Shown here: piece by piece, positions 41,004-64,000 of the stretch
How the letters are laid out: every line of letters begins with the position of its first letter
How positions within the stretch are numbered: position 1 is the first letter of the stretch
Assembly: GCA_047495785.1 (NCBI GenBank)
Contig: JBLDXI010000028.1
Span: 1,860,001-1,924,000, forward strand
Reading direction: 5' to 3'
From: Lepidodermella squamata
Taxonomy: Eukaryota; Animalia; Gastrotricha
Length of the DNA stretch: 64,000 nt
Translations under genes and position numbers: made by a program
Notes under the pieces: model-generated
Databases searched by the model: none
The model's input: only the letters and a program-made list of their open reading frames with translations
Told to the model about the DNA's origin: nothing

Positions 41004-44000
41004 ATGGCTAGCTCGTCCAGCAATGCTATTTTTGAGGTTTGACACTTTTTCAGCAATTTTGCTACAACATTTTGCCTTAATTTTAGGCTGTTTGCTGTGC
41101 TGTCTGCCTAGAAGTGCCTTCTGACACGAAAATTCTTTCTGCCTGCGGTCATACAATCTGCGCTGAGTGCCTCGCTAAGCTGACTGAAAAGTCGAAAACC
41201 TCGGTGAATTGCCCAGAATGCAGGGAGGAGACGAAGATTCCCCCACTGGGCTTGCGTACAAATTACGCTGTGAAACGAGTCGCTGAGGTTTACCATGAAG
41301 CGCAATCGAAGCGCGCCAAGTGGTCAAAACCTGGTGAACAGTGCGGGCATGTTCATTTTCTCACGAAAGATGAACGAGAGCTTTGTTCGCATTGTAAAGA
41401 ATGTTTCTGCTCATCATGTTACCTGCTTCACTTGGAGCGCGTTAAGCTGGAAGCCATTTTCGCATGTCACGACGTAATTTAGTACCACTGCAATTTAATG
41501 ATTAACACTTTAACTGCCAAAAATAGACTGCGAGGTCCGATATTTGGGTATAATTCCTGGGTCTGTCAAAAAGTCATCTTTTTTCGGGTCAACAATGCGT
41601 TGAGCGGCAAAATGCCTGACGGCAAAGTGTAGGCCATGACCTGGCGGTTCTTTTGACACCGAATTCGGGGCCAAAAGGTCTCAGCAGGTCATTGAAAATG
41701 ACAGTGAAATAACGTCGAAATTTTGGATTAGAGCCAAAAATCAGACCCACGAATTGGACCTAATTATTAGACCCAGATTATGGCGCAACAATCGAAATTT
41801 CACTGTTTTTCAAGTTTGATTTCTGTGCGTTCCTTGATGTCTTTGGCTCCAAATTTGGTGTCAAAAGAACCGCCAGGTCATGGCCTACACTTTGCCGTCA
41901 GGCATTTTGCCGCTCAACGCATCGTTGACCCGAAAAAAGATGACTTTTTGACAGACCCAGGAATTATACCCAAATATCGGACCTCGCAGTCTATTTTTGG
42001 CAGTTAAAGTGTTAATTGGCGGGTTGTCACTTTTTTAGATCAAAGAGCAGTTTGAACGCAACAGGGTCAAGACTAACGATGCAGCTAATGCAATTCAAAA
42101 TAAAATTGACTCAAATTTGAGTTCGGTAAAAAAGGAAATAAAGTCCTCGGGTGAAGCTTTGGTCAACTGGTTTAGAGACTTGGTTAATGAGCGCTGTGAT
42201 GTCTTGATAAAAGCTGCGGAGGATCTGGGAAATCAGCAGCACGAAGAGTTGAGTGAGCTGCTATCGGAAGATTGGCGTGAAAAGCTCAATGAGTTGGAAA
42301 AGCTGTCCAGCACCCTTGAGAGCTCATCAATGCTGAGCACGTCTTGTGAGGATGTTATTGCGCTTCACTGCTTTGCGAAAGAGATGAGAACCAAGGTAAT
42401 TTCCAAATTGAAAACCGATACAATAAATTTACCCTAATCCATTACAAGTTTGAACATTTCTCGCAAATCAGCTTTTCTCCGAAACTATGGGGATCTACTG
42501 CTTGGGGATTTTATTGAATATAGATATTGTTGAGATCTAACATTTTGCCAAGTTTCATCAACACATGGTTAATATATAAGAATGTTTAGTTATGCCAGTT
42601 GCTGAGCATGGGCAACCAAGCTGCCAAGTCGAAGATTGGTTTAACATGGAATGAATCTATTCGCGAAACCGTGACTTCCGTGCTGTATGAAAACACAAAA
42701 GTTTCCCTGGAATGTTCGGATAATGGTGAAAATGGCAATGCCGAGGTGATTTCTTCCACTTCAACCACCTGACTTTTATACATTCTTTTATTGAACACAT
42801 TAAGGCTGATTCATATCAAAAGTTTCACTTGGCTGCCGCAGAAGGAAATTTGAAAAGCTTCCAAGATTTGCTGAGCGGACTTCAAAAGAAGTGGATCAGA
42901 TTTGTGCTAGAACACACTGATGAATGGGATGACAATCGAACCGTTCTTCTACAAGCTGCTGCTCAAGGCTCTGCAGAACTGGTGAGCTATATTCTATCAC
43001 AAGGCGCAGATATATTGGCCCGTGATTCTGAGTGCATGACCGTGGCCCAAATCGCGGCTGAGCAAGGTCATTTAGACATCCTGGCATTGGTTCTCGAGCG
43101 AAAACCCCAACTCAAAGATGTCAGGGATAAACAGGGGCTCACTTTGTTTCATACAGCGTCGTCTTTCGGCAAAGTGGATGTTGCAAAATATCTGGTCGAC
43201 AGATTCTCTGTGGATTTGGATGCAATAGACAGTGAGAAAACTCGGCGAACTGCTGCATATTTTGCCGCATATAATGGGCATGTGGAAGTTGTGGCTTATC
43301 TATACGAAAAGGGTGCGAAGTTTGATATTGGCGAAACACAAGGCCTTACGCCGATACTTGCTGCTGCTTCGAGTGGGAATCTAGCTGTGATTGACTATCT
43401 GCTAGAGCGTTCCGTTAACGTGAGTTCGATCAAAGATAAGGACGATAACTCTATTTTGGCAATTGCCGCTTCACTTGGTCATCTGGAAATGACAAGCAAA
43501 GTTACCGAGGTAATGCCAAATTTACTGGAAATTGCTGATAAAACCAGATCCACTCCGCTGCTTCTCGCCGCTAAAAATGGTTATTTTGATGTCGTCAAGT
43601 TGTTGATTGAACGTGGCGCTAATCTTGAGGCGAAAACGATTTTCGGCGAGACCTTGGTTCACCTTAGTGCACAATCTGGCAATGTTGAGCTACTGAAGTA
43701 CGCCATGGCACTAAGCCCGAATTCTGAGCGGGTAATGGATAATCAGAAATGGACACCGCTGCACTCAGCTGCATTCGGTTCTCAAGGCACCGCCTGCGTC
43801 GATTATTTACTACAGCTTAATTGGCAGGATATAGAGTTACCAAGCGCTGAAGGAACGCCGCTTATGATTGCAGCTACGTATTCAAAATTGCCAAGTTTCA
43901 AACATTTGCTATCGAAGGGTGCGAGCATTTGGACGACGGACAATAATGGTTTCAATGTCCTAGGCAAAGCTCTCGAGAAAAAATGGTATGACTTGGTGAA

Positions 44001-44142
44001 ATTTTTGCTTGACCTACCCGAAGCCAAGTTTCTTGCTATGCGCAAGAACAATGCGGGTAATACGCCTGTTCAAATCGCCCAGAAGGACGCGAACTTACCC
44101 GAAGATATTGGCCGCAAGTTAGCTTTGCTTGCTTCGAATTAA
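41004..44142 (+). CDS. RING / B-box-like / coiled-coil / ankyrin-repeat protein, copy A; exons 41004-41036, 41087-41473, 42039-42395, 42589-42745, 42806-44142
   Basis: C3HC4 RING (CAVC...CGHTICAEC...CPECR), TRIM-type linker LRTNYAVKR, Cys/His cluster CGH..CSHCKECFCSSCYLLH, helical exon and ~12 ankyrin repeats. Exons join in frame through GT-AG introns. Confidence 0.85.
41506..42011. mobile_element. TTAA-flanked MITE (piggyBac-like), 506 bp, in intron 2 of copy A
   Basis: ~165 bp near-perfect TIRs (CACTTTAACTGCCAAAAATAGACTGCGAGG... / ...CCTCGCAGTCTATTTTTGGCAGTTAAAGTG), with TTAA at 41502-41505 and 42012-42015. Confidence 0.9.
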
Positions 44143-44396
44143 GACATGCTGCAGAACAAAATACTTGCATCTCAGTATTTCCTTCTACTTCATCCTTTTT
44201 ACATTGTTAGCAGTTTTGTTAGTTTGGACCCATTTGAGAATATTGCATTGAAACTATTCAGTTTTACACCAGTCTTTTTTTTAACAATTGGTATATCGAT
44301 TCACGTAAAGTCAAACGTAAAGCCTCGATATCTTTCCCCGAAAAAAGCATTTTTATTTAGAAACATCAATCATTTGTTATTATATCGAACTATTAG

Positions 44397-46924
44397 ATGG
44401 ACATTGGCATGAATTCGTCTAATACTGGCTGCCCAGTGGAAGCGGTATGTGCGTTTAGGGTCGTTCTCTATGTTACCTTTTCTATTATGAGTCCAGGCTC
44501 TTACGTGCACAATATGTCTCGAATTGGCGAATGACCCGAAAATTCTTCCACAATGTGGTCATTCATTCTGCTCCAAATGCATCGAATCGATATTGATTAA
44601 AATGCCAAAATTCACCCAAGTTGTTTGCCCAGAGTGCCGCAGTAAGGCGAATGTTACGATGGATACAATTAAGTGTAAGCGCAGCAAATTTGAAATAGTC
44701 TTACTCTAAGTCGATTTTTTAGCCAATATCGCAGTGAAACGAGCCGTACAAGTTTTGAAGGAGGAAAATGACAACATGAAAAAGTCGAAGCTGGGCGAAT
44801 CTTGTCTGCACCTGTCCAACTTATCGCGATCTAACGCGAGACTATGCGGCCATTGCGACACACAATTTTGTCCATCTTGTTTCGTTGCTCATCTTGAACA
44901 CATGCGAAGTGAGATTTTCTTCGCTCACAGCTGGGTATTTTTTGCAATTTCCATGTGCGATATAACTCTTTCAAACTTTTAGCTTGAATCTAAACGCGAA
45001 AACGCTCGCTCGCATGCCTTAAGCCAGCTCGATGTTATTCGGCCGAAAATCAAAAGCAGCGCTGTGCAAATCAAGGAGGAAATTCGAAAAACCGGAGAAA
45101 ATTTGATTGCTTCATTACAGGATGCCATTAAACAGCATTGCGACCATTTAACAAGCCAAGTTGACCATTTTATAGCGGATCAGCTGCACTCGTTGGAAAA
45201 CAGTGCCGAACTGATGGACGCCACAGCCGATATTGATGGACTGATCAAAGATGTACAATCAGCCCCACTTTTGTTCAACTCGGGCGAGAAATTTATCCGT
45301 CTTCATGCGACTGTAACAGAACAGTGTCAAAATGTAAGCTTGTGTCATTAAGATGAGTCATAATAGAACACTAATTGTGCTCGTATTGCCATTTCCATTT
45401 TGAGGTTGTCGAAATGCTGGCGATTGAGAACAGCGAAGCTGCCAATTCAAATTACGCGACACTCATTGACGTCAGCTTTGTAGAATCAACGAAACGCCTA
45501 TTGAGCAAAAGCTTCACGTTTCACCGCGTTGTTACTCATGTGGAGAAATTGGATGCCAAGGTAAGTTTTTATCGCTTATTTCGTATCAAAACTTCATTCC
45601 CTACAATATCCAGGAATATATGTACTGGGAATTTCATCAATCAGCGAAAAATGGGAAAACTGAAAACTTCAAAGATTTGCTAAGCAAGGTTCCGGAAGCT
45701 GGACTTGATTTGATAATTCGGCATGTAGATGAAACTGATCAAGGAAGAACGGTTCTTCATCAAGCAGTTGCTTCAGGATCTTTGGAAATTTTTCAAATGT
45801 TGTCGCCTCGCTTGTCATTTGAAGACTTGAAACAAGGCGATTCCAATGGCGAAACCATCTGCCACCTTGCGGCTAGTTTCCCTGGAATACTTGATCATAT
45901 CTTGAAAATCGACCCTTCAATCTTACCAGTTCGTGATAAAAAGGGTCGAACAGTTTTGCATTTGATGGCTTCTAATGGCAGAGTCCCCATCAGTGCTGTT
46001 GAGAATTTCAAAGCAATAGTTGACTTGGTTGATTCCGGTAAGAACACTGCTCTTCTTGTCGCATGCGAAAAGGCTAACTCGCAAATGGTCAAGTTTCTCT
46101 TGGAAGTTGGCGCAAATATGCGGTTGTCAAGGGGAGCCATGATGCCAATTCACGTCGCCGCAAGTAATAATCACGTTGAAGCTGTGAGAATGATAGCGAG
46201 CAAGGATGCTACTATGTTGGATGCTTGTAGTGAAACTGGCTACACTGCTTTTCTGGCCGCTTGCTTCAAGGGTAGTGTTGACGTAATGAAGGAATTGTTA
46301 GCAACCTGTCGAAATCAAAAGCTCAGTACGCTTTCTGCGATCCATGTAGTCGTTTATAGTTGCAAAGTCGAAGCTGTTGCGCTTCTCGTCGAAAACGGCT
46401 TCGATGTGAATTGCAAACAAAATTCCGTAATGACAGCCTTCTTCCGCGCTGTTGAGAGTGGCAGCTTACCTGTTGTAAAATATATAATTGAGAAATGCCC
46501 AACGGCTTACAGCGAAACGGCACTGCATTACGCCGCTTCTTGTAAAAATGACGATACTGCTACGGCAATGATTTCCTATTTCATTGAGTCTCATTCAACG
46601 CCTGTTAATCTGAAAGCTTCTGTAAAAAAGCAGCCGCCAACTACTGCGTTGATGATTTGTGCCGAAGCTAATCACGTTCTAGCGTTTGATTATCTCATCA
46701 GCAAAGGAGCTGATCCAGTTATTGTTGACGATAGCGGGAACAACGTCCTTCATATTGCGATTGAAAAGCTGTCTCGTGATGTGATTGAAAGCATTCTGAA
46801 ACTTCCTGTTGCTGGACAGCTGTTGCGAAGCAAAAATGGATCTGGCGTCACGCCAATCGTTGTTTCAAAGCCCAATTTTCCCGATGATCTTATCGAACGA
46901 ATGCGTCAAGTCATCGCGGCTTGA
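44397..46924 (+). CDS. RING / B-box-like / coiled-coil / ankyrin protein, copy B (type II)
   Basis: Exon 1 MDIGMNSSNTGCPVEA, RING CTIC...CGHSFCSKC...CPECR, Cys/His cluster, helical exons and a terminal ankyrin exon (~45614-46924). Confidence 0.85.
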
Positions 46925-47059: not shown

Positions 47060-49150
47060 ATTTCATTTCATTTATTTATTTAGGTATTTATTTACTCAGT
47101 ATAAATCCCATTATTGAGAGCTCGAATTATGAAAAGTGGCGAGTGAAAGAAACAATATAAGGCAGAACAGTTCCTGTATGTTCAGGGCGTTTCTTGAGTC
47201 GCAACAATCTGGCTTACTAACTGTGAACAAGTCAAGTGCAATTACTAGTGTGATGGCGTCGGGGGTCGGAGGCTTCGCCTATGCCGCATCGAAACGTTAC
47301 CGTAACCAAATGGACGTTGCGTTTCCGAGCACCCTAGGCATAAGGCCATGGCTAACTCTGGCGCTTGCTTGACCGTTAGCTCGACCGCATAGCATGGGTA
47401 TGATCAATGACTGAAAGTGCCCTCTGGTGATCTGGTGATCGTGATCGTAGGGGAAGTCGCGTTATTCGCGTTTGATGTTGCTTTCGTTGTCGCTGTTGGT
47501 TGACGTGAAACCAGGGGCGAAACATTCGAACCACGTGTTACGTTAGCCAAGTTGCCCTGCCATTTCTCTCGAAAGTTGGCGATAAGCGACTTACTCTTAG
47601 CGACTTCCTGACTATTTAGCCAGAAGAAAGTGTTTCATAGCAAATACCCTGAATGTTCGGGGAGCGTGCGAGTTGTAGGCATGCAATGTCATTACGCAGT
47701 AGGCCTCAGATCGGCTGTCGCTCTGATTCGAGTGACAGGTTTTTGGTTCCGCTTACGTAAATTTGGCCCTGGCAAGAGGCGGAAAAGTAATAGTAAGCAC
47801 GAATGAGATAAAAGTAAGTTATTATTCCTCGCCAATGTTTAACTCCAATGTAGTGACCAGGTCGGGCCGGGTCACGCTCAGGATCAGGCGGATCATTTAG
47901 TATTTATTTATTTAACGAGATTGAATCCAGTAAGAAAGCTTAAGGAATCATTATAGGAGAAAGAAGGTGCAATTCACAAGTGTTCGGTCAGAGTCTCGGG
48001 AGATCCGTTTCCCTTCTATTTCATATTCCGTTTTACAATTATTTGTTGGAAAAAATAAATGGCAGGCTGAGCAGGTGGTTGTACGTCAACTGGTTGATGC
48101 ATTCTGTGCATCAGGGGGCAGAGAGTTGAAAAGCACCACTCCTCTGTAAGCTAGCGTCTTTTGAGGTTGCTGCGATGATAAGGCGGGAACGACTAGCCGG
48201 CCGCGGAAGACGGTACGAGTCAGGTGCTGGTTTGCCTCTAGCGATTAGTGCCTCGCAGTGACTAGATACTGATTTAACTCCGATGTGAGACTCGGCAAAG
48301 ACGAACACGCAGGACAGACGGATTTTCTGTACCGATTGAAGATCAGCAAATCGGATCGGCTGAACAATTCAAGTAAATGTCAATAATCTTCCAAAAGAAT
48401 TACGATGGGTTAGATTGAGCTGTCGTCGAAGCCGCTTGTCAGTTATTTGTGTGATAATTTATGGGCTTGTTCTTATTATTCCTCGTCAATGTTGGACTCG
48501 ATTTCTGAGCTGATAAGTCCACCCCGGGCGAATGGAAGAATGTTTGAATAGGCCGCCTAACGTAGGCTCCTGTTGATCATTTATAGCGCGGTTGGGATGG
48601 TCAGCACTTCGTAATGCTTTGCGCTTTCGAGATAACAGAGTAATCGAGAAGAATCGCACGATCTTGGGTGACGAGGCCGGATTCGAGTAGACATCGGCTC
48701 CACAGCGCGTTTTCTACTAATGATAAGCCTTGGCAACGGCCATACTAGAAATTTCAACAGCGCACGCTGCCGAAGCGCCACCAGGCAACTAGAGCTGAAG
48801 CAATGATGAAAATGAAAACAGCGATCGCTGCTGCGGCTGCGGCCGAAGGTGAAATGGATGGAGTAGCTACAGAAAGAGCCGTATATCACGCGCTGGAGCA
48901 AGCTAGCGCCGTTAGATCATCCGTAGCCTCTGGCGAATAGAGGATAGAGGATGTTGAGCCTAGTTTCGTTCAGCAGTGGGTTGCTTGAAAACAGAAACAT
49001 AAACGCCGACTCGACTCAGGCCAACGTCAATCTCGGCTCTCTGACGATTCCAGTGACTCCCGGATTTGAATATTACTTTGTCATGAAGAGTCAATGTTTC
49101 AAGCCGGAGATGCTTTACTGTTTCATTGGAAATAACCAGAATACTGAAAA
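47060..49150 (-). mobile_element. Highly decayed interspersed repeat, probably a CR1/L2-type LINE 3' remnant
   Basis: Homologous to 52633-53640. Minus-strand peptide fragments (AYVRRPI, LQSVQK, TTLE, LLFRLLPG) occur in the order expected for a LINE ORF2 C-terminus, with an (AAAT/GAAAT)n microsatellite tail near 47060-47085. There is no intact ORF. Confidence 0.45.
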
Positions 49151-49451
49151 TGATACATCTACGCCTTATTATAGGCCACAGCTATGACTAATGAGGGAAA
49201 CGCAATAGAAGCCAAGTTATAAATGAGCTGATACTACAATGGCCAAATGCCAAACAATCATGAACAACAATATCATGAATCACAACAATAACTAATCGTT
49301 ACATACTTTTACTTCCACGCATTGACGCAAATAGAGGATTTAGCATCCCACATCAGCATATGGATCTAGACATAGTTTCACGTGCCCCACTTCCTGTGAG
49401 GAACATTTCTTGCTGATTCCTACTTTTAGTTTATTATTGATATTGTGGATA

Positions 49452-52151
49452 ATGGCTGATGCAAAACCGAAGTCTGTCCGGAGTTCGATTGTTGAGGTAC
49501 CTAATCATTTTAAAAACCTGTTGCAAACATTTATAGTGAGTATGTTTTCAGGCTTTGAGGTGCACCGTATGCTTGGAACTGAGCCCTGAAGTTAAAATGC
49601 TGAATGAATGCGGTCATTCGATTTGTGCCACATGTCTCTCTAAGCTGAACGAAGATAACAAGAAATCGGTATTTTGCCCTGAATGCAGAACTGAGACTGT
49701 TCTGCCGAAGAATGGTCTCGCAGCTCTGCGGACAAATTTTGCCGTGAAAAGAGCAATCGAAGCTTTAAAAAGCGATGAGCCGATTGATACGAAGAAGAGA
49801 AAATTAGGCGAAGGCTGCAATCATCTGGCGTTCGTTGAGAAAGATGAGATCACACGGTGCAAACACTGCAGAGAGGACTTCTGCGAGAACTGCTACCGGT
49901 GTCACCTGGAAAAAATACGCCTGGAGGCTAGATATGCCAGTTATAACGTAAAAACCCAGCTTAAAATATCAAAATATACCTATATTCATTTATATTCAGC
50001 TTCGAGAAACTTTCACCTCGTCGATGACCTGCGTTAGAAAACGGTGCCAAATCATTCGCTCGAAAATTGAAAGCGTTTCCGATGCGGTCAATGTGGAGAT
50101 TGACAGCAGTTGCAGAGCGCTCTTAGAAGCTTTGGAGATAACTATTCAGAAGCGGGCTGGGCAGCTTAAGGCAAAAACAGCTGAGTTCAAAATGGCCCAG
50201 CTCGAAATATTCGAGAAAATGACTTCTAGCGATGAAGCGGATGGATTGCAAGAACTTGAAAAGCTGGCTTCCGAATGCATCAATGCTTCGCTGTTATTCG
50301 TCTCAGACAGCAGTATTTTGAAATTTCATGAATTATCAGGAGCGATTCGACGAAAGGTTGGAAACCCTGCTTTACAACTTGGTTTTTACAAATTTTTCTA
50401 ATTTTAGTGCGGTAAGCTGATGCGATACGAGCGTGACGAATGGAATCCTTCTGAGGTCAAATTAACGTGGCCTGAATCTGATCTTGTCAAAACATTTGCG
50501 GACATCCTGACCAAGACAACCGACGTTGATTCTACACCTGTGGCTATATATGAAGCAATAAGGACGGTACATTTTACGGCTTTTCCTGATCTTTTCTCTC
50601 TATATCTGGTTCAATAGCGCGATTCGCGATTTCATTATAGCTATAGTAAATTTGATTTTCTATTGTTTTTGCATTTCAGGGCACTGAATACCACGTAATC
50701 CATGACGCTGCTCGAACTGGTAGTTTTGAATCGCTTCAAGCGCTCTTCCAGCAAATACCAGCCGGCTGCGAACCCATCGTTATTGATCATCAGGATGCGC
50801 GAGATGGCTATAAAACATTGCTGCTCCAAGCTGCAGCTGACAGTTCGATTGAAAAAGTCGAATTTCTTCTGTCAAGACCTAAAATCGATACGCTAGCGAT
50901 GGATTTCGAACAGCGAACGGCGGCTCACCTTGCTTCGCGAAATGGCAACTTGGCTGTCCTAAAGCTTTTGCTGGCAAGGGAGCCTAGTTTGAAAGGATTA
51001 CGTAGCTGCAAATGGTTCAATTTGCTACACGAGGCTGCGAGTGGCGGTCACCTGAATGTCGTAAAATTCTTGGTGGAAGATGAGAAATTCGACTTGGAAG
51101 CCACTGATGAATTGAATGGATATACTGCTGCAATTTTGGCTGCGATTAACGGCAATTGCGATGTTGTAAAGTATTTGCTTGAGCGGGGTGCTAATTTCGC
51201 CCATCGTGACTCTACAGATGGCGGACTGCCAATAATGCATGCTGCCTGGAATAAAAAACTTGATGTGGTGAAGCTGCTGTTGAAGAAGAACCCTGATTTC
51301 CTGAACCAGGTTGACTCAAAAGGGAGGTCGCTGCTGCGGCATGCAGTTGATGGCGGTGATATTAATGTCATAAAGTAAGTCAGATGAGCCAGATGTTTTC
51401 GACAAAATGGCCCCGTGGCCCTAAAATCGAATAATTATTCAAGTAGTCGTGATTGTATTTCATTTGGGCAAATTTTCAATTTTCCCTGCCTCTCCTCTAA
51501 TTTAGATGGCTCCTCAAGAAACCTGTCGAAATAGACCGCCTTGATGAAAATGGCGAAACTGCTCTGTTACAAGCTGCCAGGGAAGGGTATTACGATGTTG
51601 TTAAAATTCTGATCGATCACGGAGCAAATATCCAGGCTGAAAATACGAATGCGGAGAAATTCTACCACGTTTGTGCCGAGTCTGGTAATGTTGATTTATT
51701 AAAATTGGCATTTGAGCTGTTTCCTGGCTCCGAATTGTTGCCTGATAATTACGGATTCACGAGTTTGCACGCTGCTTCTTATGGGAAAGATGCTATAGAT
51801 TGCTTGAAATTCCTTCTCGAACGCGTCGGTCACGCCATCGATATGCCAACTGAGCCTATGAAGTGGACCCCTCTGTTGTTAGCTGCGCGACGGGGAAACA
51901 TTGGAAATTTGGCATTTCTGCTCGAAAACGGCGCTGATATCAAGGCACGCAATAGTAACGGGAAAAACGTGTTACATGTAGCCATTGAAGAAGAGCAATA
52001 CAGAGTTGTATCGTTCTTGATCAAACGTCCAGAAGCTGCTTTTTTGTTGAACCAGGCTGATGAAAATGGGTACACGCCGTTAAAACTGGCTTACGATGAT
52101 GAGTGTTTTCCGTCAGAACTGGATGATGAAATGCTAAAATGGCAATTATAG
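49452..52151 (+). CDS. RING / B-box-like / coiled-coil / ankyrin protein, copy C (type I)
   Basis: Exon 1 MADAKPKSVRSSIVE, RING CTVC...CGHSICATC...CPECR, Cys/His cluster, coiled coil, and ankyrin exons 50680-~51374 and ~51506-52151. Confidence 0.85.
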
Positions 52152-52501
52152 GTCCATAACTATGAGAAATATGTATACGCAGATGATTTTCTTCGCTCTT
52201 TTCTACCCGATTTATAAAGCTACTACATTCTTGGTAAATTAATAAATATCTGAAGCATTGACCCGATCACTCTTTTTGGTTAATCATGAACACCATTGGC
52301 GTATTTTTATTTTATTTCAATTTTAGTGTTTAGAGACAGTGTTTTTGTGATTCTGAAGCGCGGAATGTGATTGACTTTTGACATACTGGTGCAAAGACAT
52401 GCTCATAGGGCATAACGAAGGGTAACAAGTGATGAAGTTTTGTGAAATTTATTGATTCTTCTAAGATTATTAATTGAATACTTTATCCATCAAGTTGCCA
52501 A

Positions 52502-52635
52502 ATGGAAGTTGGTATGAATTCGTCGAATACGAGTGGTTCAGCAGTGAAAGCGGTATATTTATTAGATGTCATTAGATGTCATTAGATCACTTTTGCGAAT
52601 TTTAGGTTAACCAACTCGGGCAACTCAAGACTGAC
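52502..52635 (+). pseudogene. Deleted relic of a type II (B/E-like) RING-ankyrin gene
   Basis: Exon 1 MEVGMNSSNTSGSAVKA plus an intron, followed directly by CCAACTCGGGCAACTCAAGACTGAC (matching coiled-coil exon sequence of copy E at ~58328-58352), then by the repeat remnant. Confidence 0.75.
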
Positions 52636-53640
52636 TGTGAACACGTCAATGATCGGGGGCTACGCCGATGCCGCTTCGAAACATAAGGATAGGTAAAGGG
52701 AAGCTGCGGTTCCGACTACCCGGGCATAAGGCCGTGGCTAATTTGTCTGCTCGAGTTGTGAGGGTGGCGACTGCGGCTCCGGGCCGGAAGAGCCCTTGAG
52801 GTAAATATGTCAACGCCGAGGGTCCGATCGGACCTGTTCCTGTTCTTCCGCGTCTTCAGCTGTCTCCGCTGTCGATGTGGTTGCTGCGATTTTTTTCAGC
52901 GCCATCGTAACCTTCAACTTTGTTGTTGCAAATAATCTGTATTTTTTCTGTCGTCCCGTCCAATGGCATTTGATCGCGATAGGCGAAGTCGCGTTTAATA
53001 ATTGCACTGTAGCTTTTGTTACCGTTGTTGGTTGACGGTATACCAGGTGCGATACTGTCAGGGAAACATTAAGACTTGGCTAGGTACTACTCTATACTTT
53101 ATTGTGAATGAATCGAACATTGATCGTTGGAATTCAAGGCCTTAAATATTGGCGATACAATTCTAAGTCGAACACGCGATCACTTCCTAATTAGATATCA
53201 CATGAGAATCACAATATTGTTCATAGCCATTGCGTAGAAGCCAGCTGCCAAACGGCACATCGTTACAGATACCTTTGATCCACGTGTTATGTCACTAGCC
53301 ATTTTCCTCGAACGTGGGCGATAAACGGCCCAGCCTCGGCGAAATCCGACCATTTAGCCAGAAACAAGTCTTCAAAGAAAGAATAAGACGTTCGGGGAGC
53401 GTGCGATTCGTAGGCAGGTAATATCATTACGCAGCTGGCCTCAAATTGGCTGTGCACTGATTCCGCTTACAGTAAATTTGATCCCGGATGAAGTTAATTT
53501 TCTTCGTCAATGTTGGTCTCCAAGGTAGCGATCAGGTTGCGCCGGGTCGATCTAAGGATCAAGCCGAAATTGAGTGACTAGATGATGATGTAGCTTCGAT
53601 GTGGGACTCAGCAAAGGCGAGCACCCGTGACAGTCGCAGG
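52633..53640 (-). mobile_element. Second copy of the decayed LINE-like repeat
   Basis: Shares blocks with 47210-48315, e.g. ACTGTGAACA, GGCATAAGGCCrTGGCTAA, GTTCGGGGAGCGTGCGA, CATTACGCAG and GACTCrGCAAAG. Confidence 0.5.
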
Positions 53641-54509
53641 GACATTCATGAAACTGTAGAGAGAAATGTGTGGTTTATTATTAATCTAGTTCGGGTATAA
53701 TTCCAGCCCACCAGCCCGCAGGCTAAACATGGGCGGCAACGAAGCGAGTTAGCAACCACAACCATAACAATCAATTGATCACAAAAATTATGTACATAAA
53801 AATCTAAGCGTCCATGGCCGCCAACGCCGGCCGAGTCGAGGCGCCGAAATGCGGCAAGCCACCCGCCGCCCATCCACCACCGCCAAACCGACACCGCACC
53901 GACAGCCAGCCATCCGCCGCCCGCCTCATCCAGGTCGCGGGCCGGCACCGGCTCCCGAACAGCACCGACCCGCGCCGGGTCAAACGGGTCCAACATGAAA
54001 CTTGAATAGGTCGACAGGCAACGGTCGCTTAGCCGCCAGAGCAGGCCAGTGTACGGCAGCTTCAGAACGAAAGGCAGCCCGCCCCAAGTCAGGCAGGCTC
54101 GCACCGCCAGAGAGGCCGCCGGAATAAGCCACAGGGCTTACGCCAGGCAGAAATCGTCGGAAAAAAGCGCCACCGATGGCGCTGGCATTGCCGGAAAATA
54201 CGGAATTATAAAATATCCACGAATCGAAATGATTCGACGGCATTAACAAAAAAAACGTGAGAAGCACGGAGGATGTACAGCTATGTACAGCGAAAACAGC
54301 AGCATAGTACATTATAGTCCAGAAAATTTTAAAATGAGTCCTGGATTTAAATGTTTGTATCACCTCCATGCATAGGCACAGATAGAGGATTTAGCATCCT
54401 ACATCACCATCTGGATCTGGGCATAGTTCACGTGCCACGTGCCCCACTTCCTGTGAGGAACATTTTGTAGTTTATTCCTAATTTTAGTCTATTATTGATA
54501 TTGTGGATA

Positions 54510-57149
54510 ATGGCTGATGCTAAACCGAAGTCTGTCCGGAGTTCGATTTTTGAGGTACCTAATCATTATAAACCTGTTGGAAACATCAGTTCTTATGTTT
54601 TCAGGCTTTAAGCTGCGCCGTGTGCTTGGAACTGAGACCTGAAGCTAAGATTCTTAACGAATGCGGCCATTCGATCTGTGCCACTTGTCTTCCGAATCTG
54701 AATAAAAATAACAAAAAATCGGTCTTTTGCCCTGAATGCAGAACTGAGACTGTTCTGCCGAAGAATGGTCTCGCAGCTCTGCGCACAAATTTCGCCGTGA
54801 AAAGGGCAATCGAAGCTTTAAAAAGCGATGAGCCGATTGAAGCGAAGAAGAGAAAATTAGGCGAAGGGTGCAACCATCTGGCCTTCGTTCAGAAAGATGA
54901 GATCACACAGTGCAAACACTGCGAAGAGAACTTCTGTGAAAATTGCTATCGATTTCATCTGGAAAGAATTCGCCTGGAGGCTAGATACGCCAGTTATAAT
55001 GTAAAATCTCAGCTTAAAATCTCAGTAAATATATTTTTATTTATTCAGCTTCGAGAAACTTACAACTCGTCGATTACCCGCGTCAGAAAGCGGTGTCATA
55101 TCGTTCGCTCCAAAATTGAAAGCGTTGTCTATGCAATCAATGAAAAGATTGACAGCAGTTGCAGAGCGCTCTTGGAAGTTATGGAGAAAACTATTCAGAA
55201 GCGGGCTGGACAGCTTAAGGCAAAAATGGCAGAATTAAAAAAGACCCAGCTGGAAATTTTTGAGAAGATGGTTTCAAACGATGAACTGGATGGACTGGAT
55301 GAACTTGAAAAGTTAGCTTCCGAATGCATCAACGCCTCTCTGTTATTCGTCTCAGACAGCAGTATTTTAAAATTTTATGAACTATCAAAAGATACTCGAC
55401 GGAAGGTTTAAAGTTTGAAACCATGCTTCACTTTTTGATTTTATCATTTCTCCAACTGCTAGTGCGACGAACTGTTGCGATTCGAAAATGGTGAATGGAC
55501 TTCCTCGGTGGTCAAGTTAACGTGGCCTGAAACCGATCTTGTCAAAAAAATTTCTGACATCTTGACTAAGGCAACTGATATCAGTTGTACACCTGTGGCA
55601 ATAGATGAAGCACAATCGGAGGTAAAGATCCGTTTCTGATATATTTCTCTTCACCGACTTCGATAATGCTGTTATTAAATTAAGAGTGTGGTCCTTTGAA
55701 TTCTAGAACACTGAATACCACGAAATACATGACGCTGCTCGGACTGGTACTTTCGATTCTCTTCAATCGCTCTTCGAGAAAATACCGATCGGCTGCGAAC
55801 CCATCGTAATTCAACATCAGGATGCGCGAGATTATGATAAAACATTGTTGCTGCAAGTTGCAGCTGAAGGCTCGGCTGAAAAACTAAACTTCCTTCTGTC
55901 AAGACTTGGCATTGATACGCTAGCGACTGATGCAGATGGCAGAACAGCATCTCACCTTGCTTCGCGGAATGGCAACTTGGATGTCCTAAAGCTTTTGCTG
56001 GCTAGGGAGCCTAGGCTGAAAGAATTACGTAGCAACGAAGGGTTCAATTTGCTACATGAGGCTGCGAGTGGCGGTCACCTGAATGTCGTAAAATTCTTGG
56101 TGGAAGATGAGAAATTCGACCTAGAAGCCACTGATGAATTGAATGGATATACTGCTGCAATTTTGGCTGCGATTAACGGCAATTGCGATGTTGTAAAGTA
56201 TATGCTTGAGCGGGGTGCTAATTTCGCCTATCGTGGCTCTACAGCTGGCGTCTTACCGATAATGCATGCTGCTGCGAATATACACATTGATGTGGTAAAG
56301 CTGCTGTTGAAGAAGAACCCTGATTTTCTGAACCAGGTGGACTCAAACGGAAGGTCGCTGCTCAATCATGCAGTTGGGAGCGGAGACATCGATGTCGTAA
56401 GGTTAGCCAAACAAAAAATTAGTCAAAAAGCAGGGGCGTAACTAAGGGGGGCGGGGCAGGGTAACCCAAATTTTGAAATTTTTATTTATCTTCCCTCTTC
56501 TAGATGGCTCCTCAATAAACCTGTCGAAATTGACCGCCGAGATGGCTATGGCGAAACCGCTCTGTTACGAGCTGCTAGGGAGGGATATTACGACATTGTT
56601 GAAATTATGATCGATCACGGAGCTGATGTCCGTGCTGAAACGTCGAAGGCGGAAAAATTCTACCACCTTTGCGCCGAGTCTGGTGATGTCGATTTACTGA
56701 AATTGGCCCTTGGATTGTTTCCTGGCTCGGAATTGACACCCGATGGTTACGGATACACAAGTTTGCACTGCGCATCTCATGGGAAAGATGCTATAGATTG
56801 CTTGAAACTCCTTCTTGAACGCGTCGGTCATGCTATCGATATGCCAAATGAGCCTGGTAATTGGACCCCTCTGTTGTTAGCTGCGCGACGAGGAAACATT
56901 GGAAATGTGGAATTTCTGCTTGAAAGTGGAGCTGATATTAAGGCGCGTAATAATGACGGGAAAAACGTGTTACATGTAGCCATTGAAGAATCACGATACA
57001 ACATAGTATCATTTATGATCGAACGTTCTGAAGCCGCTTTCTTATTGAACCAGACTGATGAAAATGGGGATACGCCGTTAAAACTGGCTAGCAACGATGA
57101 CGATTTTCCGCCAGAAACGTTTGGTAAAATGCAGAAATGGGAATTATAG
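54510..57149 (+). CDS. RING / B-box-like / coiled-coil / ankyrin protein, copy D (type I, closest to C)
   Basis: Same exon structure as C. The upstream ~130 bp and the downstream spacer are also homologous to those of C. Confidence 0.85.
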
Positions 57150-57556
57150 GCTCATTACTACGAGAAATGTGAGAAATGTGAGAAATGTGAACAAGCAGCT
57201 AATTATTCTCGATCTGTCTTACCCATTTTTCAAAGCTAAAAGTTGATAAACCTCCAATTTCCAATCGAATAAATCTCCAAATTATTTACCGAAGCATTCA
57301 TTTTGGTTAAAGATTAACACGATTGGCATATATTTATTTATTTCATTTCGATTTTGAGCCTAGAGTTTTAGAGTTGGAAGATATTAATAATGTTTGGTGA
57401 TTCTGAAGCACCGAATATGACTGACATATTGGTGCAAATACATGCCCATAGTTCCTAGTTCATTACGAAAAAGGGTAAAAAGTGATGATGATGTTGTGTT
57501 CAATTTATTGCTTCGTCTAAGATTTGTGATAAATACTTTATCTATCGAATTGTCTA

Positions 57557-59896
57557 ATGGAAGTTCGCGTGAATTCCTCGAATACAAGTTGTCCAGTGGA
57601 GGCGGTATGTGCATTAATGTTAATGATCATTCTTTAATTTTAAAACTTACCCCTTGAAGGCTCTTACGTGTGCAGTCTGCCTCGAATTGGCAACTGACCC
57701 AAAAATGCTCCCACAATGCGGTCATTCATTCTGCTCAAAATGCATCGAATCAATATTGAAGAAAACGCCGAAATTCGCTCAATTTGCGTGCCCAGAGTGC
57801 CGCTGTAAGGCCAATGTATCCATGGATTCTATCAAGCGTGAGATCTGCAATATTTGTTCATCGTTTACGTCATTGATTCATATTTTTTATAGCTAATATT
57901 GCAGTGAAGCGAGCTGTTCAAGTGTTGAGGGAAGAAAATGAAAACATGAAAAAATCGAAGCTGGGCGAATCTTGCCTGCATCTGTCTAATTTATCGCGAT
58001 CTAACGCCGAAATATGTGGCCATTGCGCCACACAATTTTGCCCATCTTGTTTCGTCGCTCATCTGGAACACATTCGTGGCGAGATATTTCTCTCCCACTA
58101 TTGGGTTAGATTGTTTCAAAAATATCAACTGGACCTTTACTTTTGCTATTACAGATCGAAACCAGGCGTGAAGCTGCACGATGCCATGCCCAGAGTCAAC
58201 TTGATGTTATTCGCACGGCAGTCAGCAAGGATGCAGAATATTTTGAGAAGGAAATTCAAAAGACGGGAGAAAATTTGGTGGCATTGTTCAAAGATGCCAT
58301 TAAACAGCGTTGCGATTTTCTGATTAGCCAACTCGGGCAACTTAAGGCTGATCAGCTGCGTTCATTGGAGAGTATTGCGGAACCGATGGCCGAAGAAGCT
58401 GATATTGCCGAATTGCTCAAGGATGTGCAATCGGCTTCGCTTTTATTTAACTCTGGCGAAAAATTCACGCGGCTACATAAAACTGTAACAAGACAGGCTC
58501 AGAATGTATGATTGATTATCAGCTTTCTCATTTTTTACCAGTTGTTGATTTCCAGGTTGCTAATATGCTGACCATTGAGAGCAGTGAAATAGCGAGCCGG
58601 AGATTCATGGCGGTTCTCTTCGAGGAAAATTTTGTGGATACAATTAAGAGTAAATTGGAGCAAAGTTTCTTGTTTGTCAATCAACTACCGACAAGGGAGA
58701 AAACGGATGCCAAGGTCAAATTTAACCATTAAACACACAAAATATTCAGATGTATTGCCTTTAACCAGGAATTGATATACCGCGAATTTCATCAGGCAGC
58801 AAAAAATGGAAAGGCCGAGGAATTTAAAGATTTCCTTAGCAAGGTCCCGGAAGCTGGACTAAATTTGATAATTCGGCATGTTGATGAAACTGATCAAGGA
58901 AGAACTGTTTTGCATCAAGCAGTGGCTTCAGGATCAATGGAAATCGTCAAACTTCTATTGCCTCGCTTTTCATCGGACGAACTGAAATCAGCTGATTCGA
59001 ATGGTCAAACCATTTGCCATCTTGCAGCATGCTTCCCAGAGATACTAGATTATATCTTGACAGTCGAATCATCAATCGTGCGCATGGTAGATGGAAATGG
59101 CCGAACGGTTTTGCATTTGATGGCTAACAATCACGTTGAAGCTGTTCGAATGATAGCGAGCAGAGATGTAAGCATGTTGAATGCCACTTCTTGGAATGGC
59201 TATACTGCTTTCCTCGCGGCTTGCTTCAAGGGCAAAGTTGAGGTGATGAAGGAGTTGCTAGCGACATGCCGTGATCAAAGGGTCAATGATTACTCCGCAA
59301 TCCATGTGGCCATAATCAGAGGTAATTTGGAAGTAGCAGCGTTTCTCATAGATAATGGTTTCGATGTGAGATGCACGAAAGGCTCCAGTCTGTCACCATT
59401 TTCTCGCGCTGTTGAGGCAGGGTGTTTACCTATTGTCAAATACATGCTCGAAAAATGCCCTGCAGCTTACAGCGAAACGGCGTTGCGCCATGCTGCCAGA
59501 TGCAAAAGTGACGCCGATGCCAAATTAATGATTTCTTATTTCGTTGAGACGTACTCCACCCCGGTTAATTTGAAATATTCATTCTCACCGCCTACCGCAT
59601 TGATGATTTGCACTTCGGCTAATCATCCACTATCGTTTGAGTACTTGATGAGCAAGGGGGCCGACCCTGCTCTTGTTGATGATTGCGGGAACAACGCCCT
59701 TCATATCGCGGTTGAAAAGCAGTCACAGGCCGTGATCGACTGCATTCTGGGACTTCCCGTCGCTGGACAGCTGTTGCGGTGCAAAAATGCATCCGGTCTG
59801 ACGCCGATCGGTGTTGCGAAAGCTAACTACGCAAACGATCTTGTCAAACGGATGCGTCAAATCGTCAAGGCGCAGATTGGCTGCGAACATGTGTGA
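57557..59896 (+). CDS. RING / B-box-like / coiled-coil / ankyrin protein, copy E (type II, two ankyrin repeats shorter than B)
   Basis: Exon 1 MEVRVNSSNTSCPVEA; colinear with B except for an in-frame 65-aa loss in the ankyrin exon. Confidence 0.85.
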
Positions 59897-60327: not shown

Positions 60328-63300
60328 ATGGCTGATTCAAAACCGAAGACTGTCCGGAGTTCGATCGCCGAGGTAATTTTCGACAACCCTCAGCAAATGA
60401 AATTTAGCGCTCATTATTCAGGCTTTAAGCTGTGCCGTATGCTTGGAACTGAGCTCTGAAGCTAAAATGCTGAATGAATGCGGTCATTCGATTTGTTCCG
60501 CATGTCTTACAAAGCTGATTGACGATAAGAAAAGATCTGTGAAGTGCCCTGAATGCAGATCCGAGACTGTTTTGCCAAAAAGTGGACTCGCAGCCCTACG
60601 CACAAATTTCGCCGTCAAACGGGCAATCGAAGCTCTGCGTAGTAATGAAACAACCGCTGCGAGGACGGCGAAATTGGGCGAATGTTGCAACCATTTGGCG
60701 TTTGCTCAAAAAGACGCTATCACGCAATGCAAGCACTGCGGAGGGAACTTCTGCTCAATGTGCTACCGGTTTCATTTGGAAAGGATAAGGCTCGAGGCCA
60801 GATATGCCAGTTATAATGTGAGCTTTTCCGTTGATTGATATTCTAGAGGCCATTGACCTGAAAAATCTGTTATTTCAGCTTCGAGAAATGTATGATTCAT
60901 CAATTTCCCGCATGAACGATCAGTATGAAGAAATTCGTTCAAAAATTGAAAAGGAAGCTAACGAAATCTACGAGAAAATTGATGCGAGTTGCAAGGCGCT
61001 GATTGGCGCACTTGAAAAAGCTGTGATGGAGCGGGCTTTGCAGCTTAAGACGAAAACTGGAGAGCTAAAAAAGACTCAACTTGAACATCTGGAGAAAGTA
61101 ATTTCAAACAAGCAGCTTGATGGATTGGAAGAAACTGAAAAGTTGGCCACGGAGTGCATTGATCAGTCGCTGTTATACGTCTCCGACAGCAGCGTCTTGA
61201 AATTTTATGAACTATCGAAAGCGACACGCCGCAAGGTATCTGCAACTTTATGTTTTGTATTTCTATTTGGGCTTGAGTTGGAGAGAAAAGTAGAGCAAAG
61301 GAAAAGTATTTATGATTTTTATGATAAACTCAAGCTTTCGTCTTGCCGATATAGCCCACCGCTAAAATGAGCAAGTTTTACGATATTTTTTGTCGTTGCA
61401 AACGTCTGGCGAAAAAATATAAATAGGAGTATGTTGGTGTCCTTTTTGTCAAGTAACAGAGAGCTTCGTAGCTGATGTGGGATATAAGGCCGTCGAGGAT
61501 CAGCGTGCGACGTGGGTTTAGCGCTTCGAGTCAAGCCATTCAAATATCGCGACTTGCGCGCCAGAACAGTGTGGCGGAAATAAAAATATGTGGCGTTCTG
61601 TCCAACAAGTGGTTTCGATCTTACCATTAAATATTGCTTTCAACGCTCGAAATATGCGCCGATAGCAAGGCTCCTTCTTGGACGTCTTACGGACGAATAT
61701 TTTCGGAATCACATTTTCCCCACCCTGCCACAATGTGTATCGTAAATAGTTGAAGGAAGATCGCGGAACAATCGAAATCATTGGAAAAAGGATGTAAGAA
61801 AGATAGTTTTGAATAATTCGTCCCATTCGGAATAATTCGTCGTGAAATAATGTGTCAATCGGCGCTTCGACCTGTCGCCCGCGCCATTTCGGGCAGAATT
61901 ATTGCCACGGCATTCCAGCGCCGAATCTTATGCGAACTTTCAGTTTATTTCTATCTCACTTGCTCATTTCCAAGCAGACAACTCGCGAGCACAGAGGTGA
62001 TTTGCCTTTCTTGTTTTTCAACTGGCTGGAGAAGTTCGGCTTTGCTTTGAAATCGATGAAATCCTGGAAGCCGATGTTGAGAGCCAGCGGGCAGATAAGC
62101 CGCCAAATCAGACGATTGCCGGTTCCCTTGAAGATCTTACCAGGCGTTAGAAATATGCCATTAGCTGGAGCGGTAGCCTTAACAGTAATCGCACCTCGCC
62201 CAGACGAGCAAGCCTTGTGTAGTGACCTTCTTCATGAAAACCCAAGGAAAATTTTATTTTAGGTAAAAGAGACACAGTGTAAAATGAAACAAAAACTTAC
62301 CCTTTTCTTCGTGTTCAGTCGAAGGCCGCTTTGCGGTAGATTCGCATTGGATCTGTTTCTTATCAAAATTTACGAGTTGCAACGCTGAAGATACCAGGTC
62401 GAAATAGTGCCGTATAGCTGAACAGTTGAACGCCTTTGCTCGATTTCACGGCAGATTTTGGGCCAGTCTTCATAATCGATGATAACAAATGTCTCCTTCG
62501 CCTTGGGCGGCGGTTTTCGCCCTAGTAACATCGGAATTCCCTTGTTAGCTGGACGAAGTTTCGACGAAGTTATGAGAAAAATGGCTCTCATGATGAATAA
62601 AGCCGCGATTTTACGATTGTTGAGAAAAGGGTGTAGAAAATTGAGACGCCCACCTACACAGTTTTCTTGTTAGGCACACCCACCGGGCAGAACTGATATA
62701 CCAGCTGCGAAGTATCATTTTCAACTCATTTTCAACATTCGGGAATTATGGGGGCGTTTTCAGTCAGGTCATAGACGACTTTTATTGACTTATCCTTCTT
62801 CGCGCCATTACTGTCAGCAGAGAACATAAGAACTGTGTTACGTGAATGGAAAATGTGGAGCTAGAAATCATACCAATTCCCGTTTTTTCTTCGAAACAAC
62901 AGATTAAAAGCGTCTGCGTTCTCAAAATCCGTGCCCAAACGGCGATTGTTTAGGGCGTTGCCATTCATACAATTAGCCAAGTAGTTAATGTAAATTAATG
63001 TAAAAATCAGATTATAGTAAAACAACCATTCAATTAATCATTGCTGCTTTATAATTTCTATTTGTTTCCCAAATACTAGTGCCATGAACAGTTGCAATAT
63101 GAACACGGGGAATCGGAATATTCGAAAATCGAATTTTCATGGTTCGAAAATGATCTGCTCGGCAAATTTTCGGACACGCTGACTAAATTTTCTGCCGTCG
63201 GTTTCAAGCAGCCTGTGACCGAGTGCATAACCTATTTGAAGGTAAAAAATTGATATTCCATCGTGAAATGGCATTTGGTTACTAATATATTAGAACATTG

Positions 63301-64000
63301 AGTACCACGAGGTGCATGACGCTGCTCGTACTGGTGATTTCACCGCGCTCAAACGGCTATTCGATCAGATTCCGAAATGCTGTGAACCCTTGTTAATCGA
63401 ACATCGGGATCCTCGTGACTTCAATAGAACACTGTTGCTTCAAGCAGCTGCTGTTGGTTCCATTGAAATGACAAATTATCTACTGCAAAAACCTGGAATT
63501 GACTACCGAGTAATTGACGCTGCTGGTAGAACTGCTGCTCACATGGCTTCGCAGAATGGTCACAAAGAAGTACTGAAAATGTTGCTAACAAAGGAACCTA
63601 AATTAAAATCATTGCGGGACAACGAAGGGTTCAATTTGCTTCATCAGGCTTGTTTCGGAGGTCGCCTTGATGTCGTCAAATTCCTGGTGGAGGATGAGAA
63701 ATTCGACCTTGAAGCGACTGTTGGAACAAACGACAATACCGCTGCTTTTATAGCAGCTTTTCGGGGAGTCCTCGATGTTGTCAGTTATTTATTCGAACGA
63801 GGAGCAAATTTCGCTCACCGGTCTAAAGATGGAACACTACCCGTAATGCGCGCTGCTGCAAACAATAAATTGGACGTGGTTCAGCTGCTCGTTATGAAGA
63901 AACCTGAATATTTGAACCAGGTTGATTCAAACGGAGCGTCACTTCTCAATTACGCTGTCTTGAGCGGTCGTATCGATGTTGTGAGGTAAGCAAGTTTATA
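60328..64000 (+). CDS. RING / B-box-like / coiled-coil / ankyrin protein, copy F (type I; runs off window end)
   Basis: Exon 1 MADSKPKTVRSSIAE, RING exon from 60422, coiled-coil exon to 61235, linker exon 63080-63241, ankyrin exon ~63294-63985, then a GTAAG donor. Confidence 0.82.
61270..63053. mobile_element. ~1.8 kb unclassified insertion in intron 3 of copy F
   Basis: Flanked by the 11-bp direct repeat ATTTCTATTTG (61259-61269, 63054-63064). Removing it restores a 49-nt intron like those of paralogs C and D. Confidence 0.6.

What the first reader, a model, noticed from the sequence alone, without database searches (positions are those of the whole stretch)
41004..64000. Tandem array of TRIM-like E3 ligases ending in ankyrin repeats: a candidate diversified intracellular recognition system
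Seen: six co-oriented multi-exon genes (A-F) plus one relic. Each splices a C3HC4 RING, a TRIM-style linker (LRTNFAVKR / SNIAVKR), a Cys/His cluster, a helical coiled-coil region and ~10-12 ankyrin repeats. Established: canonical TRIM C-terminal modules are PRY-SPRY, NHL, FN3/COS, PHD-bromo, MATH, ARF or TM, and familiar ANK+RING ligases (Mind bomb, plant XBAT) place the RING C-terminally. Tandem expanded TRIMs such as fish finTRIMs and TRIM5 act as restriction factors. Inference: this is a lineage-specific family using ankyrin repeats as a variable substrate or pathogen receptor coupled to ubiquitination. The ORF track splits these genes, so the architecture is easy to miss.
Basis: partly seen in the sequence, partly recalled or inferred. 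Interest (0 to 1): 0.9.

Follow-up and report, generated by a model that had tools for sequence, protein, structure and literature searches.

The report
Tandem TRIM-like ligases with ankyrin arms
A microscopic animal, probably a gastrotrich, has a row of six intact genes for ubiquitin ligases that join the front half of the Thin/NHL-1 type of TRIM protein to a long ankyrin-repeat binding arm; I found no description of this design, it also occurs in other unidentified animals, and an immune role is possible but not shown.

Summary
Confirmed. Six co-oriented genes (A-F; five complete at 691-765 aa, F cut by the window end) and one relic splice, through GT-AG introns at shared positions, into RING, zinc knuckle, coiled coil and ankyrin repeats (13 counting caps; 11 in E). 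One probable RNA run shows three introns spliced and a poly(A) end. The linker-to-ankyrin joint was not displayed, but homologues encode coiled coil and ankyrins in one exon. New here: (1) the knuckle is the B-box variant of the Thin/Abba-NHL-1 TRIM-NHL branch (hhalign 98% against 5% for B-box2), so ankyrins probably replaced an NHL propeller; (2) the family is not genome-specific: metagenome contigs from five samples carry it with the same intron, in a separate tandem expansion and as one apparently lone copy among housekeeping genes; (3) selection is purifying overall (dN/dS 0.19-0.33), and the ankyrin binding face changes about twice as fast as the back face but never significantly above neutral. 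The host is probably Lepidodermella squamata (circumstantial). The scan noted this family before on at least 11 other stretches of this genome. New variant of a known kind; immune role about 30%.

The parts
41004..44142 (+). Gene A (type I), 756 aa; exons 41004-41036, 41087-41473 (RING+B-box), 42039-42395 (coiled coil), 42590-42745 (linker; acceptor may be 42599), 42805-44142 (13 ankyrin repeats)
41501..42016 (.). 516-nt MITE-like insertion in intron 2 of A; 175-nt arms 98% complementary, TTAA at both ends
44397..46924 (+). Gene B (type II), 751 aa; exons 44397-44444 (start may be 44409), 44497-44674 (RING), 44723-44934 (B-box), 44983-45333 (coiled coil), 45405-45560 (linker), 45614-46924 (13 ankyrin repeats)
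49452..52151 (+). Gene C (type I), 765 aa; exons 49452-49496, 49552-49947, 50000-50356, 50408-50566, 50680-51374, 51506-52151; introns 50357-50407 and 51375-51505 seen spliced in run X2
52241..52264 (+). AATAAA at 52241 and probable poly(A) site of gene C near 52264 (adapter plus T-run loose end in run X2)
52502..52634 (+). Relic of a type II (B/E-like) gene: first exon 52502-52556 (78% to B) and a scrap of coiled-coil exon 52574-52634 (79% to E)
54510..57149 (+). Gene D (type I), 765 aa, 79% identical to C; exons 54510-54554, 54605-55000, 55049-55405, 55463-55621, 55707-56401, 56504-57149; intron 55001-55048 seen spliced in run X2
57557..59896 (+). Gene E (type II), 691 aa, 67% identical to B, in-frame loss of 65 aa (two ankyrin repeats); exons 57557-57604, 57660-57837, 57893-58104, 58155-58505, 58556-58714, 58769-59896
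60328..63985 (+). Gene F (type I), runs off the window; exons 60328-60372, 60422-60817, 60879-61235, 63080-63241, 63294-63985; intron 3 is 1844 nt
49311..57620 (+). Tandem duplication unit: 49311-52569 (C plus relic exon 1) matches 54362-57620 (D plus E exon 1) at 78% over 3.3 kb; array order is type I-II-I-(II)-I-II-I

Best explanation
These are TRIM-like E3 ubiquitin ligases of a family that arose once in a group of small animals (probably gastrotrichs), when the RING-B-box-coiled coil half of a Thin/Abba-NHL-1 type TRIM-NHL gene acquired ankyrin repeats in place of its NHL propeller. Inferred working: the coiled coil makes an antiparallel dimer as in other TRIMs; each ankyrin arm grips a protein substrate on its concave face; substrate-driven clustering brings RINGs together, they bind E2~ubiquitin and tag the substrate. 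The family spread by tandem duplication (here apparently as a two-gene cassette) and by loss. The ligase half stays constrained while the binding face and repeat number change faster, giving a repertoire of ligases with different substrates. Shown: gene structure, domains, intact RING ligands, splicing of three introns, homology to NHL-1/Thin, occurrence in other animals, rate pattern. Inferred: dimerisation, ligase activity, substrate binding, differing specificities. Substrates are unknown; foreign proteins about 30%, host proteins or a mixture more likely.
For: Stop-free GT-AG models with shared intron positions. Ankyrin exons have no usable start: no upstream in-frame Met, first Met 57-166 aa in for five of six, and only 52-113 nt of AT-rich intron before them. 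Run X2 joins B-box to coiled coil (D), coiled coil to linker (C) and ankyrin to ankyrin (C), with a poly(A)-like end after the last exon. Coiled coil and ankyrins lie in one open exon in homologues L001, L002, L005, L006. RING model (pLDDT 86) matches TRIM2 RING, rmsd 1.4 A over 72 aa, Z 10.4; top PDB sequence hits are TRIM2/TRIM3. Helical periodicity P<=0.02 in all six and a long-helix/short-helix model. Knuckle versus NHL-1/Thin B-box: hhalign 98.2%, E 5.5e-14, 75 columns; versus canonical B-box2: 5%, 19 columns. Tree groups the family with NHL-1/Thin at 97/94 (names). dN/dS 0.19-0.33 for close pairs. Concave versus convex ankyrin face omega 0.82/0.45 (C-D, p 0.03), 0.66/0.41 (C-D-F, p 0.02), 0.36/0.21 (B-E, p 0.06).
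Against: The linker-to-ankyrin splice was not among the joints displayed (three were hidden), and contigs cannot prove one transcript. The alternative tree grouping with B-box2 TRIMs is not rejected (p-AU 0.28). Pfam zf-B_box hits none of 19 members, and the B-box fold was not searched on its own. No activity, substrate or expression-response data. Surface classes were assigned by hand from the ankyrin consensus.
Confidence: 0.72

Rival explanations
1. One reading: a diversified intracellular immune receptor system in which ankyrin arms recognise proteins of viruses, microsporidia, bacteria or transposons and send them for destruction, like TRIM5 or fish finTRIMs. This is a more specific form of the best explanation.
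For: Separate tandem expansions in two lineages (window clade 92/90, metagenome array clade 100/98); relic, repeat-number change and short conversion-like tracts between C and D (66 and 63 nt identical, permutation p 0.012); faster concave face, hairpin tips omega 1.7 in C-D (p 0.07, chosen after seeing the data); unchecked scan notes of ankyrin-SOCS, F-box-ankyrin and TIR-NB-ARC-ankyrin clusters in the same genome.
Against: No site class is significantly above omega 1, and in C-D-F and B-E the concave face is significantly below 1. Paralogues are old (dS 0.38 to saturated). Coding differences listed for gene C in run X1 are 11 nonsynonymous to 10 synonymous, far below the roughly 3.5:1 site ratio (partial list). 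No infection data. One homologue stands alone on its contig in a housekeeping neighbourhood (L009).
Confidence: 0.3
2. Host-protein turnover ligases (development, muscle, stress or quality control) whose copy number grew mainly by drift in a genome prone to tandem duplication. The faster binding face reflects weaker constraint after duplication, not a race with pathogens.
For: Purifying selection everywhere; descent from Thin/NHL-1, which act in muscle and neuron upkeep (own knowledge); expression in an RNA run with no known challenge; neighbouring tandem triplet of ion-channel genes in the same window; lone homologue on L009.
Against: Large expansions arose separately in two lineages; the concave face outpaces the equally exposed convex face in all three comparisons.
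Confidence: 0.4
3. The RING-B-box-coiled coil exons and the ankyrin exons are separate neighbouring genes, or the array is an amplification or assembly artefact.
For: The final joint was not displayed in RNA; the probable source genome was whole-genome amplified (PMC11660948).
Against: Copies are only 27-79% identical as proteins, so they are not assembly duplicates; there is no room or Met for a separate ankyrin gene; the joint is intron-free in homologues; same phase-0 GT-AG intron in six genes.
Confidence: 0.03

Closest known systems
Thin/Abba (Drosophila) and NHL-1 (C. elegans) branch of TRIM-NHL proteins (with TRIM32, per PMC9070667; subfamily C in PMC3503706)
   Same: RING with the same C-terminal helix, a single B-box variant with C-x-H-C and a last His running straight into the coiled-coil helix (no H-x2-H), then coiled coil; hhalign 98%; sister group in the tree at 97/94.
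   Different: Ankyrin repeats instead of the NHL propeller; first knuckle pair C-x-H instead of C-x2-C; multi-copy and fast-turning-over, whereas the NHL-1/Thin hits are highly conserved across animals.
TRIM2/TRIM3 (class VII TRIMs)
   Same: Best solved-structure match for the RING (rmsd 1.3-1.4 A, 36% identity).
   Different: They have a canonical B-box2, filamin and NHL domains.
TRIM5 and fish finTRIMs (own knowledge)
   Same: Tripartite motif plus a variable C-terminal binding module; tandem expansion.
   Different: PRY-SPRY module, vertebrate, with demonstrated positive selection and antiviral roles; none of these is shown here.
BARD1 and plant KEG (own knowledge)
   Same: N-terminal RING with downstream ankyrin repeats.
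   Different: No B-box-coiled coil tripartite motif; BRCT or kinase/HERC2 domains; not tandemly expanded.
Mind bomb, plant XB3/XBAT (PMC3596331), ASB and Fem1 ankyrin E3 systems
   Same: Ankyrin repeats coupled to ubiquitin ligation.
   Different: RING is C-terminal or supplied by a cullin complex; no B-box.

Membership tests
TRIM/RBCC | N-terminal C3HC4 RING with intact zinc ligands | tested here: met
TRIM/RBCC | One or two B-boxes after the RING | tested here: met
   Variant C-x-H..C-x-H-C..C-x2-C-x3-H, invariant in 19 sequences; homologous to the NHL-1/Thin B-box. Caveat: Pfam zf-B_box does not hit it.
TRIM/RBCC | Coiled coil after the B-box, order RING-B-box-coiled coil | tested here: met
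   Periodicity test; single-sequence model with long plus short helix (low confidence overall); profile matches to TRIMs extend through the region
TRIM/RBCC | All domains in one transcript | tested here: inconclusive
   Three splices seen in X2, final joint not displayed; indirect support strong
TRIM/RBCC | Dimerisation and E3 ligase activity | not testable with these tools
   Needs biochemistry; E2-contact motif CPxCR intact
TRIM/RBCC | C-terminal module of a described class (SPRY, NHL, COS/FN3, PHD-bromo, MATH, ARF, TM, none) | tested here: not met
   Ankyrin repeats instead; the word ankyrin does not occur in the TRIM classification of PMC3503706. Not required for being a TRIM, but it fits no described class.
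TRIM-NHL, Thin/NHL-1 subfamily | NHL-1-type RING-B-box sequence | tested here: met
   (alternative tree not rejected, p-AU 0.28)
TRIM-NHL, Thin/NHL-1 subfamily | C-terminal NHL propeller | tested here: not met
   Only ankyrin families hit the C-terminal exons; derived from, but not a member of, this subfamily
Restriction-factor TRIMs (TRIM5, finTRIM) | PRY-SPRY recognition domain | tested here: not met
Restriction-factor TRIMs (TRIM5, finTRIM) | Positive selection on the recognition surface | tested here: inconclusive
   Concave face faster than convex, never significantly above 1; only 2-3 sequences per test
Restriction-factor TRIMs (TRIM5, finTRIM) | Induction by, or action against, pathogens | not testable with these tools
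   No challenge data
Mind bomb / XBAT ankyrin-RING ligases | RING C-terminal to the ankyrin repeats | tested here: not met
   RING is N-terminal in all six
BARD1 | RING plus ankyrins plus C-terminal BRCT pair | tested here: not met
   A-E end right after the last ankyrin repeat; no BRCT hit in the exons scanned

The most novel reading that the evidence does not exclude
A new TRIM class (tripartite motif plus ankyrin arm) serves as a large, germline-encoded repertoire of intracellular receptor-ligases against parasites in gastrotrich-like animals. It would be an ankyrin-based counterpart of PRY-SPRY TRIMs, expanded separately in several species from one Thin/NHL-1-derived founder.
Probability: 0.28. 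Interest if true: 0.8.

Novelty: new variant of a known kind. Interest (0 to 1): 0.55.

Why it matters
TRIM ligases are classed by their C-terminal module, and I found no ankyrin class in the papers or protein collections searched. This family shows how a new class can arise: a conserved Thin/NHL-1 scaffold swaps a propeller for an ankyrin arm and then multiplies separately in different species. It is also a natural version of the ankyrin-binder-plus-TRIM design used in engineered protein degraders (own knowledge). If the substrates are foreign, it would be a first handle on intracellular immunity in a phylum whose defence I found nothing on; if they are host proteins, it is still a large unannotated ligase family that gene callers split into pieces.

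Tried and rejected
Word-indexed homologue search with the D RING-B-box-coiled coil piece found nothing (limited to 147-467 aa). The A ankyrin exon found only generic ankyrin proteins at 22-32% identity, none with a RING. None of the 150 best profile hits contains ankyrin repeats; the family shows up only as split exon fragments. The single-sequence fold of the tripartite part was poor (pLDDT 57). ESM Atlas gave generic RING/B-box and ankyrin clusters only. NDK from L009 has no named relative above about 78%, so its host could not be placed. Paper searches for TRIM plus ankyrin found no description. No Rfam hit in 40-64 kb; no Pfam hit in the spacer or F-intron ORFs tested. The sigma-70 scan does not apply to an animal and was ignored. 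Rejected: canonical B-box2 origin as best fit (hhalign 5%); gene conversion as the reason X1 variants match D (12 of 21 is about what shared ancestral states would give); depth as a measure of expression (contigs only). As the operators asked, joined spliced models were not sent to any search or fold tool: exons were searched by reference, and joins were made only inside local scripts for frame checks, rate estimates, trees and comparison with already fetched sequences. The D query 54605-55405 contains its 16-codon in-frame intron.
Full report
Observation. The region 41004-64000 holds six co-oriented multi-exon genes and a relic. Using only GT-AG introns, each gives a stop-free frame: A 756 aa, B 751, C 765, D 765, E 691, and F 550 aa up to the window end. 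Pfam finds a C3HC4 RING near the start (five genes scanned) and strong ankyrin hits at the end (A, B, E scanned). All six RINGs keep eight zinc ligands and end in CPECR. Between RING and ankyrins lie a Cys/His knuckle, a 117-119-aa helical exon with significant 3.5-residue periodicity (P<=0.02) and a 52-54-aa linker. There are 13 ankyrin repeats counting caps; E has lost 65 aa (two repeats) in frame. Two subtypes alternate: type I (A, C, D, F) and type II (B, relic, E), 27-28% identical to each other where compared. The block C plus relic matches D plus the start of E at 78% over 3.3 kb, so a two-gene cassette probably duplicated.

One gene or two? Run X2 (2015, RNA by the tool's guess) shows the splices 55001-55048 (D, B-box to coiled coil), 50357-50407 (C, coiled coil to linker) and 51375-51505 (C, within ankyrins), and an adapter/T-run end at 52264, 23 nt after AATAAA at 52241. 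The linker-to-ankyrin joint was not among the joints displayed, and contigs cannot prove a single transcript. Indirect evidence is strong. The gap is only 52-113 nt, AT-rich and phase-0 GT-AG in all six genes. There is no upstream in-frame Met, and in five of six the first Met is 57-166 residues into the ankyrin exon. In homologues the coiled coil and ankyrins are one uninterrupted exon.

Host. I could not name it directly. The evidence points to the gastrotrich Lepidodermella squamata. Its published assembly is 122 Mb, 157 contigs, 43% GC, 83x coverage, 66% k-mers shared between haplotypes, and was sequenced alongside C. elegans (PMC11660948). Here GC is about 43%, the scan lists 1993 windows on 147 pieces, the best DNA run holds 0.65 of the words with long contigs at depth 57-93, and its companion run is 101 Mb. 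This is circumstantial.

Relatives. A profile search of 1.84 billion proteins gave no full-length protein with ankyrins among the best 150. Several short hits were RING plus knuckle exons from unannotated eukaryotic contigs. Their loci show the same design: tandem arrays on L001, L002, L005 and L010, single genes on L004 and L009, and short contigs L006 and L007. They come from five samples (three ENA assemblies of CAOS or k141 type counted with their duplicates, and Logan run SRR23086389) at 36-43% GC and about 30-38% identity, so at least two or three other species. In 22 of 22 distinct genomic copies a phase-0 donor lies exactly 14 codons after the last knuckle His; L008 lacks it and may be a transcript or an intron loss. 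The window genes and the metagenome array genes form separate clades (92/90 and 100/98), which implies separate expansions. On L009 one copy with clean ankyrins lies between a TRIM-NHL gene and NDK, as a conserved founder might. Its host is an animal with no close named relative (NDK at most 78%).

Origin. The RING and its C-terminal helix match TRIM2/TRIM3 best by sequence and structure (model pLDDT 86). The knuckle is missed by Pfam zf-B_box and matches canonical B-box2 poorly (hhalign 5%). Many long hits named thin or nhl-1-like carry the same unusual knuckle: C-x-H-C, then C-x2-C-x3-H running directly into the coiled-coil helix. Profile comparison gives 98.2%, E 5.5e-14 over 75 columns. 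A tree joins the family with NHL-1/Thin at 97/94, although grouping with B-box2 TRIMs is not rejected (p-AU 0.28), and groups were picked partly by the motif itself. Thin/Abba, NHL-1 and TRIM32 form a distinct TRIM-NHL branch (PMC9070667). The simplest history is replacement of the NHL propeller by ankyrin repeats.

Selection. Pairwise dN/dS is 0.33 (C-D), 0.20-0.25 (with F) and 0.19 (B-E). The RING and B-box are most constrained (0.07-0.31) and the post-coiled-coil linker least (0.38-0.51). In a fixed-site codon model the concave ankyrin face has omega 0.82 against 0.45 for the convex exposed face (C-D, p 0.03), 0.66 against 0.41 (C-D-F, p 0.02) and 0.36 against 0.21 (B-E, p 0.06). No class is significantly above 1; hairpin tips reach 1.7 in C-D only (p 0.07, post hoc). 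This fits changing substrate specificity but does not show an arms race. Power is low with 2-3 sequences.

Mechanism. By established TRIM biology (own knowledge) the coiled coil forms an antiparallel dimer with RINGs at the ends, and clustering on a substrate activates them. Ankyrin arrays bind proteins on their concave face. I therefore infer a repertoire of substrate-selecting ligases (confidence 0.72). Whether the substrates are foreign (0.3) or host proteins under relaxed constraint (0.4) is open; separate genes or artefact 0.03.

Comparison and novelty. It works like a TRIM and meets the tested defining features of the tripartite motif, with a variant B-box. It is not a TRIM-NHL (no NHL), not a PRY-SPRY restriction factor, and not a Mind bomb, XBAT or BARD1 protein. 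The TRIM classification in PMC3503706 never mentions ankyrin, and five further paper searches found no description; the library lacks most subscription papers. The scan itself noted this family on at least 11 other stretches of this genome (unchecked notes, some possibly adjacent windows of one cluster), so this array is one of many. What this window adds is the Thin/NHL-1 ancestry, the spread to other animals with a shared intron, and the binding-face rate pattern. Verdict: real; new variant of a known kind; interest 0.55.

Noticed in passing
window 41501-42016: 516-nt palindromic MITE-like element in intron 2 of gene A; 175-nt arms 98% complementary, TTAA at both ends.
   Followed up: partly
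window about 53600-54350: High-copy repeat: DNA run X1 depth up to about 10,500 against about 80 elsewhere, no X2 coverage, no Pfam or Rfam hit, no terminal repeats found. A weaker peak lies at 53000-53400.
   Followed up: partly
window 47266-48320 and 52653-53636: Decayed shared spacer sequence (73-80% in four blocks) after both B and the relic; nature unknown.
   Followed up: partly
window 61236-63079: 1844-nt intron in gene F where paralogues have 50-194 nt; no terminal repeats, no Pfam hit in three ORFs tested; possibly an insertion.
   Followed up: partly
window 34628-39480: Three tandem single-exon Cys-loop ligand-gated ion channel-like genes of 384-389 aa with a very short cytoplasmic loop; Pfam checked for the third only.
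   Followed up: no
window 49550: Run X2 has two contigs joining a different first exon to a C-like RING exon, suggesting another expressed paralogue elsewhere in the genome.
   Followed up: no
L001 3192-3767 (also L002 8390-8965): OTU-like cysteine protease ORF (E 7.5e-4) inside the metagenome ligase array; could be a deubiquitinase or part of a transposon.
   Followed up: no
L009 212-3148: A TRIM-NHL gene resembling mei-P26/nhl-2 (resemblance from memory) lies directly upstream of the lone RING-B-box-coiled coil-ankyrin gene, with NDK downstream.
   Followed up: partly
window 5233-31263: Ordinary neighbours judged by eye from translations: thrombospondin-repeat ADAMTS-like gene (5233-8125), cytochrome P450 (18396-20015), KIDINS220-like ankyrin gene (20142-25282), TRIP4/ASC-1-like gene (29681-30901); WD40 gene at 39575-40895.
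   Followed up: no
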